DNA of 64,000 bases from Penicillus capitatus (GCA_965649825.1 OZ287698.1:1379949-1443948); one strand, 5' to 3'. Shown: positions 6,741 through 49,525, counted from the first letter of the stretch. Numbers and translations are program-made. The notes: generated from the sequence alone by a model not told the origin.

Positions 6741-7890
6741 TTAAAAAGAGTCTTTTGATTTTCTCAACTTCGCAAATTCGTCGACGTTCGCAGCACGAAG
6801 AAAGGGATTTGTTGCCAATTCCACTGCCATGGAGGCTGGCACAGTCGGCACGCCCTGTGACAGCGACGTGTCCAGTGATGTGACGGGCGGGGCAATAGTT
6901 ACCTCTCTGCGCATTTGATCGACTTTGGATTTGCGTTCTCTGAGCTCAGCATTGTCCGGTTCTTCTGTGATGGCCCATCTCGCATTGGCCTGTGTGTACT
7001 CGTGCCCACAATAGACGACGGTCTCAGGCGGCAGAGCCTTGAGCTTGGACAGCGATGTGTACATTTGCTTTGGACTGCCTTCGAAAAGACGTCCACATCC
7101 CATCATAAACAATGTATCTCCTGATCACTCTTTCATCTCACACAGTTTCTCACACTTTTGAACATGCCTGTGAAGACAGAAGCAGCTGCGGGGAAGTACA
7201 GGGCGATGTGCCCTTTGGTGTGACCCGGCGTGTCGAATACGCGCATCTTGAGCTCTCCAAAATCCCATTCGTCCCCATCCTTTAACGCCACGTCAATGCC
7301 CGGAATACGATCGCGATCGGCAGAAGGTCCAACCACCGTCGCATTGTATTTCCTTTTCAGTTCCAGATTGCCGCCGGTGTGATCCCAATGATGATGCGTG
7401 TTCAACACGTAGTCCAGTTCATAGCCTCTACATAGATGCATGGGCGCATCTGCCTTTAGAATTCAGATCGGACAGAAGAGTGATGTGACTTTTGGGCGAG
7501 AGCATTCACAACGGGTCCTGTTTCGGATGGATCCACAATGGCAGTGAGGTTGGTCTTAGGCTCATGAATCAGCCAGGCATAGTTATCGCTGAGACATGGC
7601 ACACGTGAGACCTCAAGTGGAGATGTCTCTGTCGTCAGAGTGGAGATCGACATCGAAGCATGTGCGCACGGTTTTAACGCAAAGTAGACTCTCGTGAGCT
7701 GTCGTTCGAAATATGATCTTCGCAAACGGGCACCTGCCGCTTGTGTGTTTAGAAGAATGTCCTACCGCATCCACCGTTGTGCAGGCAATGTTCTCTCGTT
7801 GAGTGGCGTTCGGCGTCGAGCTCTGTTCTGAGTGAGGTGCAGAGACGACGATGCAAAAAGACGCGAAGTGCGCAAAGCAACCACCGTCAT
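6741..7890 (-). CDS. GLX2: Hydroxyacylglutathione hydrolase (glyoxalase II) with organellar transit peptide
   Basis: Motifs [43 protein letters not shown] and ELATNPFLR. Four introns, one of them GC-AG (7121-7167). Confidence 0.95.
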
Positions 7891-7953
7891 CTGTCCTGTC
7901 TAAATCGCGTACAGGTCGAAAGCGAAACGGTCTAGGTCACCGACAAGTCGAGT

Positions 7954-8911
7954 TCAGTCGACGACAAGACGGCATTGCTCTTGATCTAAAATGGACAGGC
8001 GGTCTTTGCTGACGGCCGCCTGCGCCAAAAGCCATTGTATGAATCTTCGAGCGTGCGATGGAAGATTCGGATGTTCATGCTGGATGCACTTTTGGATGAG
8101 ATCTCGAGGGTGATGGCCTCGATCATCTATATGCTCTGATCTAGAGGACAGGCACGGCACATTCGGGTTTGTTCGGATTTGCGGCGCTGGGCGAATTTGA
8201 CATGAGGCTTCGCATCAGTCCTTTCAGCAACGATGGTCTGATGCCGTCTTTCCTATCTGCCTCGAGATGCATTCCTAAGGGAGGCGACATCCGCAATCTA
8301 TGTCGGGGTAGCGGCGTAATTGCTTAGCGGAAGTTCCTTCTTCACGACGAACTACGTGTCGGATGCCCCGTGGTTAAGGTAATCAGAGCTTCCCTTAGGC
8401 GTGGCTCATGACTACACTCTTTTGACTCTTAATGGAGTTCTATGGGATGAGCGAGTCAATGCTCAAAGCACTGCCGGTTTGTATCAGAGAGTTCAAAGGG
8501 CAATACTCTACGGAGAGTACGGAAACACAACGAAGCCAATACCCAGAACATAGCTATTCGCAATCTCTACGCCGACCGCATGAGAACGCCCCAAAACGCA
8601 ATCCCTCGTCTTTGCCTATCAAGTCTCTCTACTTACTTCTGCGATGCGGATGATATCTAACAGAAAACTGTAGAAAGCATCTGGACTGGCATCGTACTCC
8701 GTTTGGTGCAGCGAATATCAACCAGGCCTCGACTGCGACATCATCCCTGCGATACCTGCCTGCATGACATGATTGACAACGCTCTTTCAGGCCTGTCCGT
8801 CTTCATGGGCGATCGATTATCCCGTTCAGAACCCATCGAGTATCGCTGACGCCATCTATCCTCCCCACAATACACAGCATTGCATCGACGTCGTGCGCAT
8901 GTTTTTGCCAT
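7954..8911 (-). CDS. Tentative multi-exon gene of unknown function
   Basis: A chain of phase-compatible exons and 51-70 nt GT-AG introns can be built (e.g. IAE|RLRIAMFWVLASLCFRTLRR|NSIK). No homology; both ends uncertain. Confidence 0.3.
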
Positions 8912-9069
8912 ACTTGCGTCCAAGATGAATAACACTGTTCCGATGTCGTCGACTATGAAACGTTGACGTCGCGTTGCCTTGCGCATTGTTCATTGCATCG
9001 TTTCTTTTTCGATATGACGTGACACCTCTATCTTATCGACTCGAGAATCCGAGGTCCATCATAGCTGAC

Positions 9070-46850: not shown

Positions 46851-47153
46851 CCGAACAACGCCGCATCAGCACACGTACGGTCGCCTGAGACGAGGCCTCG
46901 CTCTACAGAGAAGTCTCCGATCGATCCACGTGCCAAACGTCCTCAGAGCGAATGGGCCGTTTGGCAGAGAGACGTCGTCGTTCCGTTCGGAAACGGTGTT
47001 CAACCTCGGGCCTTTTTGCAGGGGTAAGGACGCCGGAGCAGCAACGCCGCGTTGTTTTCGGAATGGCCTTCACGTCGTCTGCGCCACGAACGCAAAACGC
47101 GACACGGCGTCTCTTAGTGAATGCTGGTGCTGTTCAATGAAATCATTTTGCCC

Positions 47154-48101
47154 ATGCCGATTGATTTGAGTTTCTTCTCCACGGAAGACCTCGTCGCGGA
47201 GGTGACCCGTCGACTCAACTGCCTCAGCAAACCCGAACGTCGTCTCATCCTCATAGGCAACGTCATGGCAGAGAAGGAACGGTCGAAGGAGGTTGTTTGT
47301 GGTTGTAACAGGGCCGCCAGCGAGTGGGAAGGGGACACAAAGTCCGATCATAAGGAAAGAACATTGCCTATGTCACATCGCGACGGGGGATCTGCTGCGA
47401 GAGGCCATTCGATCGGGATCGCCTCTGGGGTCCGAGGTTATCGTGTGTCGTCTTCGACTCGAATGGCGGCGCAGTGATGGAATTTAGGCCAAGAAGGCGA
47501 TGGATCACGGAAATCTCGTTTCGGATGATATCGTCGTTTCGCTGATCGACGAATCGATTTCGAACCCCGAGTGCAAAACCGGATTCATCCTAGACGGCTT
47601 TCCGCGAACCGTGGAGCAGGCAAAGAAGCTCGATTCGATGCTGGCGGCCAAAGGGAAGGGCATCGATGCCGTCGTGCATTTCCAAGTGGATCACAGCATT
47701 CTGGTGGAGCATAGATCGCACTCACTCTTTTGAAAGAGTGAGCTTTGAATGCAATGGTGTGTAGGAAGAGAGAGTGTTGGGACGTTGGGTGCATCCGGGC
47801 AGTGGACGTTCTTATCACGAGAAATTCGCCCCGGCCAAAATGCAAGGCATCGATGACATTACAGGAGAGCCACTCGTCAAACGCAAAGACGACAACATCG
47901 ACACGCTGACGAAGCGCCTCAACATCTACACCAACCAAACCTCACCTGTCACATCCTCCATTCCTTTTCAACACCTGAAAGCGTTTTCTGTAGCTGCTCG
48001 ATTACTATCGAGACAGAGTCATACATATAGAAGCAGAGAAGCCGCCGACAGACGTGGCTGAGCAGATTCGCCGTCAGTTGGCACAGGCGGCTAAAAAGTG
48101 A
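47154..48101 (+). CDS. ADK: Adenylate kinase (ADK3/4-like)
   Basis: Motifs LILIG|[27 protein letters not shown]|EERVLGRW and KRKDDN; four introns, the first GC-AG. Confidence 0.96.
47721..47742. repeat. Intronic palindrome CTCACTCTTT-TG-AAAGAGTGAG (ADK intron)
   Basis: Perfect 10-bp inverted repeat inside the 61-nt intron 47704-47764; nearly identical to the MCM5 element. Confidence 0.9.
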
Positions 48102-48254
48102 AAAGGGAGATGAGATGGAATCGCACGTACGGACACATGATTCGGGGTCACGGCCAAGTGGACCTAAGCACATCATTGGATGTTGGACATTCGATCGTAC
48201 AAATCGTTTCGTGTTTCCTGAGATCTCCCTGTTCTTTCACGGTCTTGTATTGCG

Positions 48255-49525
48255 ATGACGACGACAATTCGCTCAACAGTAGGGCGAGGACATGCGTTTT
48301 CGTCACCTTCGACACGTCGTTGCTGCCCTCCATGCGCCAAAGCTGCCGGTACCGATCGCAAAGCGAAGAAGATCGATACGTTGCCCGGTTATCCAGACGG
48401 CACTCCGATCGTCGAACCGATGGTAATTGCATCCAGCTAGAGACAGCGCAGAAAGACGGTGGGTGGCCGTGTAGTACTTGCCACATCGGCCGCGACGTAA
48501 TCGCCGAACGCAAACGATTCGCGAAGGGATCTGCGAGACGAGTTTAACGGCCAAGAATCTAATTCTCCCTCTCTTCATCCATGAGGATGCGGAAGACGAG
48601 CCCATACCGTCGATGCCAGGGGTCTCGCGTCATGGATGGAAGACAGGGTTGCTAACAAAGGTGCAAGAGGCTCGGGACTGGGGCGTCAATCAAATCATTC
48701 TCTTTCCCAAAGTACGGTGTCTCACTCTTTTCACACCTATCAGTGAGCACTGCCCAGACGCCATCGCAATTGAAAACACCCATCGGCGAAGAGGCCTTCA
48801 ACCCTAATGGACTCGTCCAAAGAACGATCCGACTGCTGAAAGACAAGCACCCAGATCTCGAGATCTACACAGACGTTGCCCTCGATCCCTATAACAGCGA
48901 TGGGCATGATGGGATCGTCCGCGACGATGGAGTGATACTGAATGATGAGACGGTTGAGTTCCTCTGTCGACAGGCAGTGAGCCAGGCAGAAGCTGGGGCA
49001 GATGTGATCGCTCCCAGCGATATGATGGATGGCCGTGTGGCCGCGATCCGAACGGCGTTAGATGATAGCGGCTTTACACATGTCTCCATCATGTCGTACA
49101 CTGCCAAATACGCCAGCGCATTCTACGGCCCCTTCAGAGATGCCCTGGCAAGTGCACCGACTGCCGGCAAGCGTGGAAGGATCATCCCGCAGCATAAGAA
49201 GACATATCAAATGGATCCAGCCAACAAGCGTGAGGCATTGAGAGAGGCCAGTTTAGATGAAGCTGAGGGAGCAGACATCCTGTTAGTCAAACCCGGCCTG
49301 CCTTATCTGGACATCATTCGCACCCTCAAAGAGTCGTACTTCCTGCCAATCAGTGCCTACCACGTTTCCGGAGAGTATGCCATGCTGAAGGCGGCGGCCG
49401 AAAGGGGATGGCTGGATGAACGCGATGCTGTCCTGGAAACACTCATGTGCTTTCGCCGTGCCGGAGCGGATCTCATTCTGACCTACTATGGCATCGAGGC
49501 TGCCAAATGGATCGCCGAACGGTAA
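48255..49525 (+). CDS. HEMB: Plastid delta-aminolevulinic acid dehydratase (porphobilinogen synthase), Mg-type
   Basis: Transit peptide, [45 protein letters not shown] and VKPGLPYLD. Confidence 0.97.

What the first reader, a model, noticed from the sequence alone, without database searches (positions are those of the whole stretch)
7121..48747. A family of short palindromic elements lives inside introns of unrelated genes
Seen: the 9-mer TCACTCTTT or its complement AAAGAGTGA occurs at least 10 times (near 7125, 14912, 26458, 39190 and 39202, 40776, 40922, 47722 and 47733, 48722), against about 0.5 expected for a random 9-mer in 64 kb on both strands. Every copy found is in a predicted intron (GLX2, TPT, SMC-like, MCM5, ICME twice, ADK, ALAD), and both orientations occur relative to the transcript. 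Two copies are near-identical full hairpins (39190-39210, 47721-47742), and hairpin-bearing introns tend to be longer (56-65 nt) than the usual 45-53 nt. Inference: relics of a miniature TIR element (MITE- or introner-like) that inserted into or created introns, or a splicing or chromatin signal.
Basis: partly seen in the sequence, partly recalled or inferred. Interest (0 to 1): 0.75.

Follow-up and report, generated by a model that had tools for sequence, protein, structure and literature searches.

The report
Conserved 12-base box in tiny introns
A 12-base sequence (TCTCACTCTTTT), often paired with its mirror copy to form a small hairpin, recurs in nine of the very short introns of an uncultured siphonous green alga; it looks like a conserved intron signal, not the scar of a jumping element that created those introns.

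Summary
TCACTCTTT or its complement occurs 11 times (0.95 expected), and the 12-mer TCTCACTCTTTT occurs 5 times exactly. All copies lie in nine introns of 46-61 nt in unrelated genes; eight are verified and one is probable.

The window comes from a Bryopsidales-like green alga in an ENA metagenome assembly. Its introns are tiny and have degenerate 5' splice sites.

The introner/MITE reading is not supported as the origin of these introns:
- The MCM5 hairpin intron sits at a position and phase shared with Bryopsis and Ostreobium.
- All 22 introns compared, five motif-bearing, are present in a sister genome (88% DNA identity).
- There are no target-site duplications.
- Family-wide similarity stops at about 12-13 nt.
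- No longer copies occur in 74 kb.

A Caulerpa-like relative lacks the ADK, ALAD and SNF2 introns. At least two of the missing ADK introns are ancient, so that is loss there.

Motif bases are better conserved between the sister genomes than other intron bases (89% vs 74%, p=0.007). The motif also co-occurs with a complementary GTGAG(A) segment in the same intron (p~1e-5).

Best reading (confidence 0.4): a selectively maintained intronic cis-element or hairpin that helps define weak mini-introns. Insertion of a tiny palindromic element into pre-existing introns remains possible.

The parts
7121..7167 (-). GLX2 (hydroxyacylglutathione hydrolase) intron, 47 nt, GC-AG. The antisense copy AAAGAGUGA ends 4 nt before the 3' splice site. 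Two further GUGUGAGA units lie upstream, so on the + strand there are three tandem motif-like units at 7124-7159.
   Evidence: The reading frame joins VFTG|DTLFMMGCG. Pfam gives Lactamase_B and HAGH_C on the flanking exons.
11352..11397 (-). Intron of a tubulin-tyrosine-ligase-like gene, 46 nt. The exact 12-mer is on the + strand at 11374-11385, antisense to the transcript. It has no partner in the intron.
   Evidence: Frames are. Pfam gives TTL on the neighbouring exon. The partner test gave 0.
14872..14929 (+). TPT-family transporter intron, 58 nt. The exact 12-mer is in sense at 14910-14921, 9 nt before the 3' splice site. Its complement GTGTGAGA lies at 14894-14901 (6-bp stem, 8-nt loop).
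   Evidence: The frame joins HLYNQ|FAFNTLERV. Pfam TPT profile positions 60-132 and 237-290 fall on the flanking exons.
26450..26497 (-). Candidate 48-nt in-frame intron (GTTGAA...GCGAG) in a coiled-coil gene. The exact 12-mer is in sense at 26456-26467, 7 nt before the AG. GATGTGAC lies just upstream. Intron status is unverified.
   Evidence: The frame is open through the segment. There is no Pfam hit to anchor it.
39160..39215 (-). MCM5 intron 6, 56 nt (GTCGCT...TTTAG). The palindrome at 39189-39211 forms a 9-10 bp stem with a 3-nt loop, starting 5 nt after the 5' splice site. The intron position and phase are shared with Bryopsis and Ostreobium.
   Evidence: Spliced alignments are. The fold gives dG -15.5, z -2.3. 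In the sister genome both arms have decayed.
40744..40803 (-). Esterase ('ICME'-like) intron b, 60 nt. The imperfect palindrome at 40775-40797 reads, in the transcript, GUCUCACACUUC-AAAAGAGUGAC, followed by UGACUGAC.
   Evidence: The frame joins ...ADTTVP|SSQSRNF. In the sister genome the hairpin half is conserved except for one loop base, while the 3' half carries indels.
40895..40942 (-). Esterase ('ICME'-like) intron a, 48 nt. The 5' splice site GTGTGTGAGA is directly followed by the exact 12-mer at 40921-40932, giving the palindrome GTGAGA|TCTCAC.
   Evidence: Frames are. The sister genome has a 2-nt indel and lacks the proximal AG, so the 3' part is non-coding. GTGAGATCTCACTCTTT is identical in the sister.
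47704..47764 (+). Adenylate kinase intron 3, 61 nt. The perfect palindrome CTCACTCTTT-TG-AAAGAGTGAG lies at 47721-47742. The position is not shared with Chlorella or Klebsormidium. The intron is absent, like all ADK introns, from the Caulerpa-like relative.
   Evidence: In the sister genome the right arm is identical and the left arm has 2 changes.
48712..48757 (+). ALAD intron 2, 46 nt. The exact 12-mer is in sense at 48720-48731. Its complement AGTGAG lies at 48742-48747 (6-bp stem, 16-nt loop). The segment shown (intron plus 5 flanking bases each side) is 95% identical in the sister genome.
   Evidence: Spliced alignment to the intron-less relative is. The fold gives z -2.9.

Best explanation
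The copies are instances of a lineage-specific intronic cis-element that selection maintains. The core is the pyrimidine-rich box UCUCACUCUUUU. It resembles a branch-site-like CUCAC followed by a polypyrimidine run.

In most loci the box lies in the same intron as a complementary GUGAG(A)/AAAGAGUGAG segment, so the pre-mRNA can form a small stem-loop.

The host introns are ancient introns that have shrunk to about 45-60 nt. Their 5' splice sites are degenerate beyond GT, and two are GC.

I infer that the box and its hairpin help the spliceosome define these minimal, weak-signal introns. Possible routes are recruiting a pyrimidine-tract or branch-site factor, or folding away 5'-splice-site-like GUGAG and proximal AG sequences.

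Shown:
- location of every copy in an intron
- antiquity of at least one host intron
- presence of the element before the split of the two sister genomes
- higher conservation of motif bases than of other intron bases
- co-occurrence of the motif with a complement in the same intron

Inferred: that the constraint acts at the RNA level, and that it acts in splicing.
For: LOCATION. All 11 copies are intronic. None is in exons or intergenic DNA of the 64-kb window or the 9.8-kb extension. The composition-corrected expectation in the introns is 0.03.

SHARPLY BOUNDED CORE. There are 5 identical 12-mers. Flanks differ between loci.

PRESENCE IN THE SISTER GENOME. The element is present at all five orthologous loci covered by the sister contig, which is 87.9% identical overall. 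Motif bases are 56/63 identical, against 710/961 for other intron bases and 114/159 within the same introns (Fisher p about 0.007). In ICME-a, ICME-b and ALAD-2 the changes and indels fall outside the box or in the loop.

FEW DECAYED COPIES. Exact 10-mers (8) are about as numerous as all one-mismatch hits (9). Three of those nine are palindrome arms, and about 3.7 one-mismatch hits are expected by chance. Introns differ by about 26% between the sisters, so old neutral relics should be mostly decayed (inference).

COMPLEMENT IN THE SAME INTRON. Six loci carry a perfect complement of at least 6 nt to the box in the same intron. Fisher's combined p over all nine loci is about 1e-5.

STRUCTURE. 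MCM5-6 and ALAD-2 fold with z of -2.3 and -2.9.

WEAK SPLICE SIGNALS. The 27 introns have 25 GT and 2 GC donors, with almost no consensus after GT. An auxiliary signal is therefore plausible.
Against: - The motif is optional. Only 9 of 27 catalogued introns carry it, and that set is enriched for them. My estimate for the whole window is about one intron in ten. None occurs in window 49-64 kb or the next 9.8 kb.
- Orientation is balanced (6 sense, 5 antisense). A single-stranded RNA signal should show a bias. Two introns (GLX2, TTL-like) carry only the antisense form, and the TTL-like one has no partner.
- Sense copies sit 7-42 nt from the 3' splice site. Only TPT and the coiled-coil candidate fit branch-site/polypyrimidine spacing.
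- No compensatory changes were seen. In ADK-3 and MCM5-6 the sister's arms have decayed without compensation.
- The conservation test rests on 63 non-independent bases in five introns.
- There is no transcript, lariat or mutational evidence.
Confidence: 0.4

Rival explanations
1. Relics of a very small palindromic mobile element, or of an old introner-like cassette (GTGTGAGA...TCTCACTCTTTTTCC..AG). It inserted in either orientation into introns that already existed. Parts of it were later kept because they serve as splice signals.
For: - Both orientations occur, in equal numbers.
- Three head-to-head palindromes of 22-23 nt lie in introns that are about 10 nt longer than the median.
- Some pairs of loci share more than the core. 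TPT and ICME-a share GTGTGAGA plus TCTCACTCTTTTTCC. ALAD-2 and the coiled-coil intron share the 16 nt GTGTCTCACTCTTTTC.
- The motif is absent from Bryopsis, Ostreobium and the Caulerpa-like loci, so it is lineage-specific.
Against: - There are no TSDs at either perfect palindrome, by inspection of the flanks.
- Arrangements are heterogeneous: head-to-head, tail-to-tail and tandem, with spacers of 0 to 16 nt. One TIR architecture would not give this.
- No longer or intergenic copy occurs in 74 kb.
- There is no presence/absence difference between the sister genomes at five loci.
- Exact copies are too frequent relative to decayed ones for insertions older than the split.
- 22 nt is far below any known mobilisable element (own knowledge).
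Confidence: 0.25
2. Neutral mutational by-product. Introns naturally contain 5'-splice-site-like GTGAG and its complement, the branch-like CTCAC. Template switching or local inverted or tandem micro-duplication extends such seeds into longer perfect repeats. Tiny non-coding introns tolerate the result.
For: - GTGAG and CTCAC are reverse complements of each other.
- The GLX2 intron holds three tandem units.
- Several introns without the motif also carry strong unrelated stems: ADK-2 z -3.3, SNF2-a, MCM5-3, MCM5-7. Hairpin content is therefore a general property of these introns.
- No compensatory substitutions were seen.
Against: - It does not explain why the same 12-mer is exact in five unrelated introns when about 0.01 is expected, or 7 copies with up to 1 mismatch against 0.63 expected.
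- It does not explain why motif bases are more conserved than their surroundings.
- It does not account for the solo copy without a partner in the TTL-like intron.
Confidence: 0.18
3. A double-stranded-DNA binding site for a chromatin or transcription factor. It sits in introns because exons are constrained and intergenic spacers are short.
For: - Strand-symmetric usage: 6 sense and 5 antisense copies.
- Clustering of two or three copies per intron.
- Sequence conservation.
Against: - There are no copies in any intergenic or promoter region of 74 kb.
- Spacing and relative orientation of paired copies vary, unlike dimer sites.
- Host introns have no consistent position within their genes; they are the 2nd, the 3rd, the 6th and, for the ICME-like gene, the two 3'-most introns examined.
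Confidence: 0.1
4. Chance or compositional artefact of pyrimidine-rich intron sequence.
For: The box is C/T-rich, like polypyrimidine tracts.
Against: - 0 of 100 dinucleotide shuffles reach the observed count.
- A Markov model trained on the introns themselves gives 0.03 copies against 11 observed, with a maximum of 2 in 3,000 simulations.
Confidence: 0.02

Closest known systems
Introner elements of Micromonas, especially the short IE-C class of RCC299 (221 copies, about 67 nt, with a highly conserved extended branch-point motif GACTGACG; PMC3879977, read)
   Same: - A green-algal, lineage-specific sequence family found only in introns of unrelated genes.
- Short elements.
- A conserved splice-signal-like core.
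   Different: - Introner elements are whole introns that resemble each other along their length. They sit at positions not shared with relatives and show presence/absence polymorphism.
- Here similarity is confined to 12-13 nt.
- At least one host intron is ancient.
- All host introns compared are shared with the sister genome.
DNA-transposon introners and MITE-derived introns (Micromonas, Aureococcus, dinoflagellates, Fritillaria; own knowledge of Huff et al. 2016, Gozashti et al. 2022, Henriet et al. 2019)
   Same: - Inverted-repeat sequence inside introns.
- Both orientations relative to the transcript.
   Different: - Those elements have TIRs at the element ends and TSDs, with splice sites supplied by the element or the TSD. 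They are tens to hundreds of nt long and number hundreds to thousands of copies, including recent ones.
- Here there are no TSDs.
- The palindrome is internal to the intron and only 22-23 nt long.
- There are no longer relatives and no polymorphism.
Intron-internal stem-loops that pair 5'-splice-site-proximal and branch-site-proximal segments in yeast introns, and the stable predicted structures of fungal introner-like elements (own knowledge: Goguel and Rosbash 1993; Rogic et al. 2008; van der Burgt et al. 2012)
   Same: - Complementary segments within one intron.
- Folding free energies below shuffled controls in a subset of introns.
   Different: - Yeast stems shorten long introns and are idiosyncratic in sequence.
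- Here the introns are already minimal.
- The same sequence recurs at many loci.
Branch site plus polypyrimidine tract (yUnAy followed by a Y-run)
   Same: - CUCAC fits yUnAy and is followed by UCUUUU.
- In TPT and the coiled-coil candidate the box ends 9 and 7 nt before the AG.
   Different: - Four other sense copies lie 27-42 nt from the 3' splice site, close to the 5' end.
- Five copies are antisense.
- Most introns lack the box and instead show NTGAY-like sequences near their 3' ends.
Mamiellales BOC1 introns (PMC3879977, PMC3491373)
   Same: Numerous introns under 75 nt with weak or no consensus signals, some with non-canonical splice sites, in a region of about 51% GC.
   Different: - The organism is not a mamiellophyte. 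The best named MCM5 hits are Bryopsis (59%) and Ostreobium (55%), and an EukProt protein named g3709.t1 (source organism not given) matches at 80%.
- BOC1 introns are AT-rich (<43% GC). These introns are 48.8% GC.

Membership tests
Introner elements / introner-like elements | Member introns resemble each other along most of their length | tested here: not met
   Shared sequence across the nine introns is limited to about 12-13 nt. The best pairs share 16 nt and 15+8 nt. No repeat family containing the motif was reported among the 20 largest of at least 60 direct-repeat families.
Introner elements / introner-like elements | Intron positions are recent: absent from orthologues of relatives, or polymorphic | tested here: not met
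   MCM5-6 lies after the residue equivalent to Bryopsis aa 275, phase 0. The same position and phase are used in Bryopsis and Ostreobium, and 11-12 of the 12 window MCM5 introns are shared. All five motif introns covered are present in the sister genome. The ADK-3 position is not shared with Chlorella or Klebsormidium, so that one is undecided. Absence from the Caulerpa-like contig reflects loss, because ADK-1 and ADK-4, which are shared with Chlorella and Klebsormidium, are also missing there.
MITE / DNA-transposon introner | Terminal inverted repeats at the element ends, flanked by a target-site duplication | tested here: not met
   Flanks of the perfect palindromes are not direct repeats...GCA|CTCAC...GTGAG|CTT and ...GTCG|CTCAC...GTGAC|GAA. 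Paired copies occur head-to-head, tail-to-tail and in tandem, with spacers of 0-16 nt.
MITE / DNA-transposon introner | Longer or autonomous family members, and copies outside introns | tested here: inconclusive
   None in the 64-kb window, the 9.8-kb extension or the sister locus. The rest of the 635-kb contig and the rest of the genome could not be read. The metagenome scan for the palindrome returned only unrelated, chance-level hits.
Branch site + polypyrimidine tract | Sense orientation, roughly 10-40 nt upstream of the 3' splice site, present in most introns | tested here: not met
   There are 6 sense and 5 antisense copies. Distance from the sense 9-mer to the 3' end is 7, 9, 27, 27, 34 and 42 nt. 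18 of the 27 catalogued introns lack the motif.
Functional RNA stem-loop | Complementary partner present more often than chance | tested here: met
   The longest perfect complement to the 13-nt footprint is 10, 10, 6, 6, 6, 6, 5, 4 and 0 nt in the nine introns. Fisher's combined p over all nine is about 1e-5. MFE z-scores are -2.3 (MCM5-6), -2.9 (ALAD-2) and -1.4 (ADK-3).
Functional RNA stem-loop | Pairing kept through compensatory substitutions | tested here: inconclusive
   Only one sister genome is available. ICME-b and ALAD-2 change only in loops. ADK-3 and MCM5-6 lose pairs without compensation.
Selectively constrained cis-element | Slower evolution than neighbouring non-coding bases | tested here: met
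   56/63 motif bases are identical, against 710/961 other intron bases (p=0.0066) and 114/159 in the same introns (p=0.0078). The sample is small and the sites are not independent.
Mamiellales BOC1 introns | Located in the low-GC region of a mamiellophycean big outlier chromosome | tested here: not met
   The closest proteins come from a Caulerpa-like contig and from Bryopsidales; no mamiellophyte is among the listed best hits.

The most novel reading that the evidence does not exclude
In this siphonous green-algal lineage, ancient introns have been compacted to about 50 nt and have lost a recognisable 5' splice-site consensus. A dedicated 12-nt box, alone or as a self-complementary hairpin, then acts as a new kind of auxiliary intron-definition signal. 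On this reading the generally structured mini-introns are recognised in part by their fold, not by canonical sequence signals.
Probability: 0.2. Interest if true: 0.75.

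Novelty: new variant of a known kind. Interest (0 to 1): 0.5.

Why it matters
If the box is a functional splicing element, it would show how a genome under strong pressure to shrink keeps ancient introns spliceable after the usual 5' splice-site and branch-site consensus has eroded. It would also give a short, testable sequence for experiments.

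The locus offers a natural comparison for rates of intron loss and shrinkage. One lineage keeps 50-nt versions of introns that are 100-1,000 nt long in Bryopsis and Ostreobium. A Caulerpa-like relative has lost all of them in the same syntenic genes.

The case is also a caution for introner surveys. A repeated intronic palindrome in both orientations can look like a mobile element and yet sit in ancient introns.

Tried and rejected
1. MAMIELLALES BOC1 REGION. My first guess was a Mamiellales big-outlier-chromosome region, because of the short introns, weak signals and 51% GC (literature). I rejected it after the MCM5 search pointed to Bryopsidales and no mamiellophyte appeared among the listed hits.

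2. DE NOVO INTRON CATALOGUE. I tried my own GHMM-style gene finder.
   - The first version ran away to 543 introns.
   - A stricter version recovered only 9-12 of 21 known introns.
   - Codon bias is too weak, so I abandoned it.
   - The junction-candidate table was not developed further.
   - The catalogue of 27 introns therefore comes from homology-guided spliced alignment with my own protein-to-genome aligner (validated) and from manual frame reading. It is not complete and it is enriched for motif-bearing introns.

3. METAGENOME SCAN FOR THE PALINDROME.
   - None is related to the window by tblastx, except for a generic SNF2 similarity.
   - The count is consistent with my rough chance estimate for 18 specified bases, and the result is uninformative.

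4. FAILED LOOK-UPS.
   - The exact look-up of the PRORP ORF failed because the public gene call uses a later ATG.
   - Nine of ten guessed edge ORFs were not on record, so only the right edge could be extended.

5. RFAM. It found no snRNA or other RNA family in the window, its extension, the sister locus or the relative. Complementarity of the box to this organism's own snRNAs could not be tested.

6. COMPLETE 30-NT MINI-INTRON. I considered that the box is part of one (GTGTGTGAGATCTCACTCTTTTTCCGACAG in ICME-a). The sister genome lacks that AG and has a 2-nt indel downstream, so the 48-nt intron is the one used.

7. ALTERNATIVE DONOR IN GLX2. I considered the internal GTGTGAGA as the true donor. 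It would insert four residues into the conserved FTGDTLF motif and give a 35-nt intron, so GC-AG is preferred.

Full report
OBSERVATION

The 9-mer TCACTCTTT or its complement occurs 11 times in the window. Dinucleotide shuffles give 0.95 +/- 0.98, and none of 100 reaches 11.

The recurring unit is longer than 9 nt:
- AAAGAGTGAG is the most frequent 10-mer in the window.
- TCTCACTCTTTT occurs five times exactly (11374, 14910, 26456-, 40921-, 48720).
- It occurs seven times with at most one mismatch, against 0.63 expected.

Outside this core the flanks differ from locus to locus.

WHAT THE SEQUENCE IS

The window is nuclear DNA of a gene-dense eukaryote with very short introns.

Relatives by protein similarity:
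- An adenylate kinase model is 83% identical to a protein on an unnamed contig. It is 58-67% identical to green algae and plants.
- An MCM5 model is closest to Bryopsis sp. (59%) and Ostreobium (55%). It is 80% identical to an EukProt protein named g3709.t1.

The organism is therefore a Bryopsidales-like siphonous green alga. It is not a mamiellophyte, as I first suspected from the literature on BOC1 introns.

Source and relatives:
- The window is part of ENA metagenome assembly ERZ25074695, contig ctg340422_42x_l, 635 kb.
- A second assembly, ERZ26696514, holds a collinear contig (L127). It is 87.9% identical over 20.6 kb to window 31209-51758. I call this the sister genome.
- A more distant contig, L001, has 43% GC, close to the 40.4% reported for Caulerpa lentillifera (PMC6476727). 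It carries the same SNF2(-)/ADK(+)/ALAD(+)/kinase(-) gene order.

INTRON LOCATION

I wrote a protein-to-genome spliced aligner. It recovers the 17 introns of Bryopsis MCM5 exactly. With that aligner and manual frame reading I placed 27 introns.

Their properties:
- Lengths are 43-62 nt, plus one of 136 nt.
- GC content is 48.8%.
- 25 have GT donors and 2 have GC donors.
- There is almost no donor consensus beyond the dinucleotide.
- Acceptors are TAG, CAG or GAG.

Pfam confirms the identities of GLX2, TTL and TPT.

The coiled-coil case (26450-26497) is an in-frame, stop-free 48-nt GT..AG candidate. I could not verify it.

A Markov model trained on the introns themselves predicts 0.03 copies in these 1,491 nt; 11 are observed.

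ANATOMY

Relative to the transcript there are six sense and five antisense copies.

Three introns hold head-to-head palindromes:
- ADK-3: CTCACTCTTT-TG-AAAGAGTGAG.
- MCM5-6: a 9-10 bp stem with a 3-nt loop.
- ICME-b: GUCUCACACUUC-AAAAGAGUGAC, imperfect.

Two introns hold tail-to-tail pairs:
- ICME-a: GTGAGA|TCTCAC, directly after the 5' splice site.
- TPT: GTGTGAGA-8 nt-TCTCAC.

The remaining arrangements:
- ALAD-2 pairs CTCACT with AGTGAG across a 16-nt loop.
- GLX2 carries three tandem antisense units.
- The TTL-like intron has a lone antisense copy.

Across all nine introns, a perfect complement to the box elsewhere in the same intron is found far more often than in shuffles (combined p about 1e-5).

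Hairpin introns are 56-61 nt, against a median of 49 (p=0.03, n=3). Motif-bearing introns in general are not longer.

Some introns without the motif also fold far better than shuffles: ADK-2 z -3.3, SNF2-a, MCM5-3 and MCM5-7. In the sister genome I compute a mean z of about -0.9 from the 21 values. Structured mini-introns therefore seem to be a broader feature here.

AGE OF THE HOST INTRONS

- Eleven or twelve of the 12 window MCM5 introns are at the same residue and phase as introns of Bryopsis and Ostreobium MCM5. This includes the hairpin intron, which follows ...SVYE| and is equivalent to Bryopsis aa 275, phase 0. In those algae the introns are 84-1,015 nt long. The window's lineage has shrunk ancient introns; it has not gained new ones.
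- In ADK, introns 1 (the GC-AG one) and 4 are shared with Chlorella and Klebsormidium. Introns 2 and 3 (the hairpin intron) are not, so their age is undecided.
- The Caulerpa-like contig has uninterrupted ADK, ALAD and SNF2 reading frames. It lacks the two ancient ADK introns as well, so the difference reflects intron loss in that lineage.
- All 22 introns compared are present in the sister genome.

CONSERVATION

In the sister genome the element is present at all five loci covered.
- ALAD-2: the segment shown is 95% identical, and all three changes lie outside the box and its partner.
- ICME-a: GTGAGATCTCACTCTTT is identical while the rest changes. The sister also lacks the proximal AG and has a 2-nt indel, which fixes the 48-nt intron model.
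- ICME-b: the hairpin half differs only in one loop base. The 3' half has indels.
- ADK-3: the right arm is identical. The left arm has two changes.
- MCM5-6: both arms have decayed, and only a 5-bp stem remains.

Overall, 56 of 63 motif bases are identical. This compares with 710 of 961 other intron bases (p=0.0066) and 114 of 159 in the same introns (p=0.0078).

Within the window there are 8 exact 10-mers. Nine hits have one mismatch; three of these are palindrome arms, and about 3.7 are expected by chance.

Introns differ by about 26% between the two genomes, and the copies predate the split. Neutral relics should therefore be mostly decayed. This step is my inference.

MOBILE-ELEMENT TESTS

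- The flanks of the perfect palindromes are not direct repeats.
- Arrangements and spacers are heterogeneous.
- No repeat family containing the motif appears among the 20 largest direct-repeat families reported for the window. The largest (D1, D2) are copies in the tandem amino-acid-permease paralogues at 56-64 kb.
- The next 9.8 kb of the same contig has no copy.
- The 10-mer is absent from the Bryopsis, Ostreobium and Caulerpa-like loci, about 52 kb in all.
- A scan of metagenome contigs for the palindrome returned 120 unrelated hits, in line with my chance estimate.
- There is no presence/absence difference between the sister genomes.

INTERPRETATION

The data favour a short cis-element under purifying selection that is specific to introns. 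Its function is not shown.

A pure branch-site/polypyrimidine role fits only the TPT and coiled-coil copies (box 9 and 7 nt from the AG). It does not fit the copies near the 5' end or the antisense copies.

Balanced orientation and frequent self-complementarity fit a structural (hairpin) role or a DNA-level origin.

I commit, at 0.4, to an RNA-level auxiliary splicing element or hairpin that assists definition of minimal, weak-signal introns.

The rivals:
- Insertion of a tiny palindromic element or old introner-like cassette into pre-existing introns, with later exaptation (0.25). Support comes from the longer TPT/ICME-a and ALAD-2/coiled-coil similarities.
- Neutral template-switch or micro-duplication seeded by the GTGAG/CTCAC complementarity (0.18).
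- A dsDNA protein-binding site (0.1).
- Chance (0.02).

LIMITS

- Only 74 kb of this genome and 20.5 kb of the sister could be read.
- The intron catalogue is partial and enriched for motif introns.
- There are no transcript data.
- My estimate that roughly one intron in ten carries the motif is an inference from intron density in the verified genes.

Noticed in passing
window-wide, e.g. 26471-26478(-), 37899-37906(-), 33940-33974, 47948-47955(-): A second 8-mer, GATGTGAC/GTCACATC, occurs 18 times. It sits near the 3' end of two introns (MCM5-12 ...CCTGATGTGACGTCTAG, and the coiled-coil candidate). It forms the donor of ADK-4 (GTCACATCC). It makes an inverted pair at 33940/33967. At least one copy is exonic (47372). 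It may be a branch-site-like signal or a second intronic palindrome family.
   Followed up: partly
window 47257-47311(+) and 7121-7167(-): Two GC-AG introns. ADK-1 (GCAACG...) is at a position and phase shared with Chlorella and Klebsormidium, and keeps its GC donor in the sister genome. Donor sequences in general show almost no consensus beyond GT.
   Followed up: partly
L001 (Logan SRR2835676) and L002 (JGI 3300001264) versus window 42.8-52.2 kb: A Caulerpa-like relative (GC 43%) keeps the SNF2/ADK/ALAD/kinase gene order but has uninterrupted reading frames. Only 28 nt separate the ADK and ALAD calls (L001 5297 to 5325). All the window's verified introns in these genes are missing there, including two ADK introns that are ancient, so this is wholesale intron loss.
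   Followed up: partly
window 37893-40363(-) versus L003 and L004: The window's MCM5 retains 12 of the 17 intron positions of Bryopsis and Ostreobium. Eleven of the twelve are 43-62 nt long and one is 136 nt, against 84-1,015 nt in those algae. This is strong intron shrinkage with positional conservation.
   Followed up: yes
window 47437-47487(+), 45076-45125(-), 39864-39922(-), 39012-39058(-): Introns without the motif that fold much better than dinucleotide shuffles (ADK-2 dG -19.3, z -3.3; MCM5-3 dG -21.1). Their stems span most of the intron. Stems are largely kept in the sister genome, partly through G-U wobble.
   Followed up: partly
window 56000-64000, and L129 13900-15700 (about window 67.3-69.0 kb): Three tandem paralogues of an amino-acid permease with a period of about 3 kb (repeat families D1 and D2), plus a fourth just beyond the window. 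None of their introns carries the motif.
   Followed up: no
L127 (sister genome), orthologue of window 39345-39387(-): In the sister genome MCM5 intron 5 ends ...CAAGAGTGAGAGTAG, where the window has ...CACGCGTGCGATTAG. This is a near-copy (8/9) of the antisense motif just before the 3' splice site, much like the GLX2 arrangement. It is a possible gain or loss of a motif copy by point mutations.
   Followed up: no
L113, L064, L071, L028, L037, L101 (metagenome contigs, GC 31-40%): Unrelated low-GC metagenome contigs carry 6-8 copies of TCACTCTTT/AAAGAGTGA within 1-3 kb, some with identical palindrome contexts. They probably belong to a separate palindromic repeat family in other organisms.
   Followed up: no
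window-wide: ATCGAT-containing words (ATCGATG 49 copies, ATCGATC 47, CGATCGA 38) are the commonest 7-mers in the window. I did not work out their distribution.
   Followed up: no
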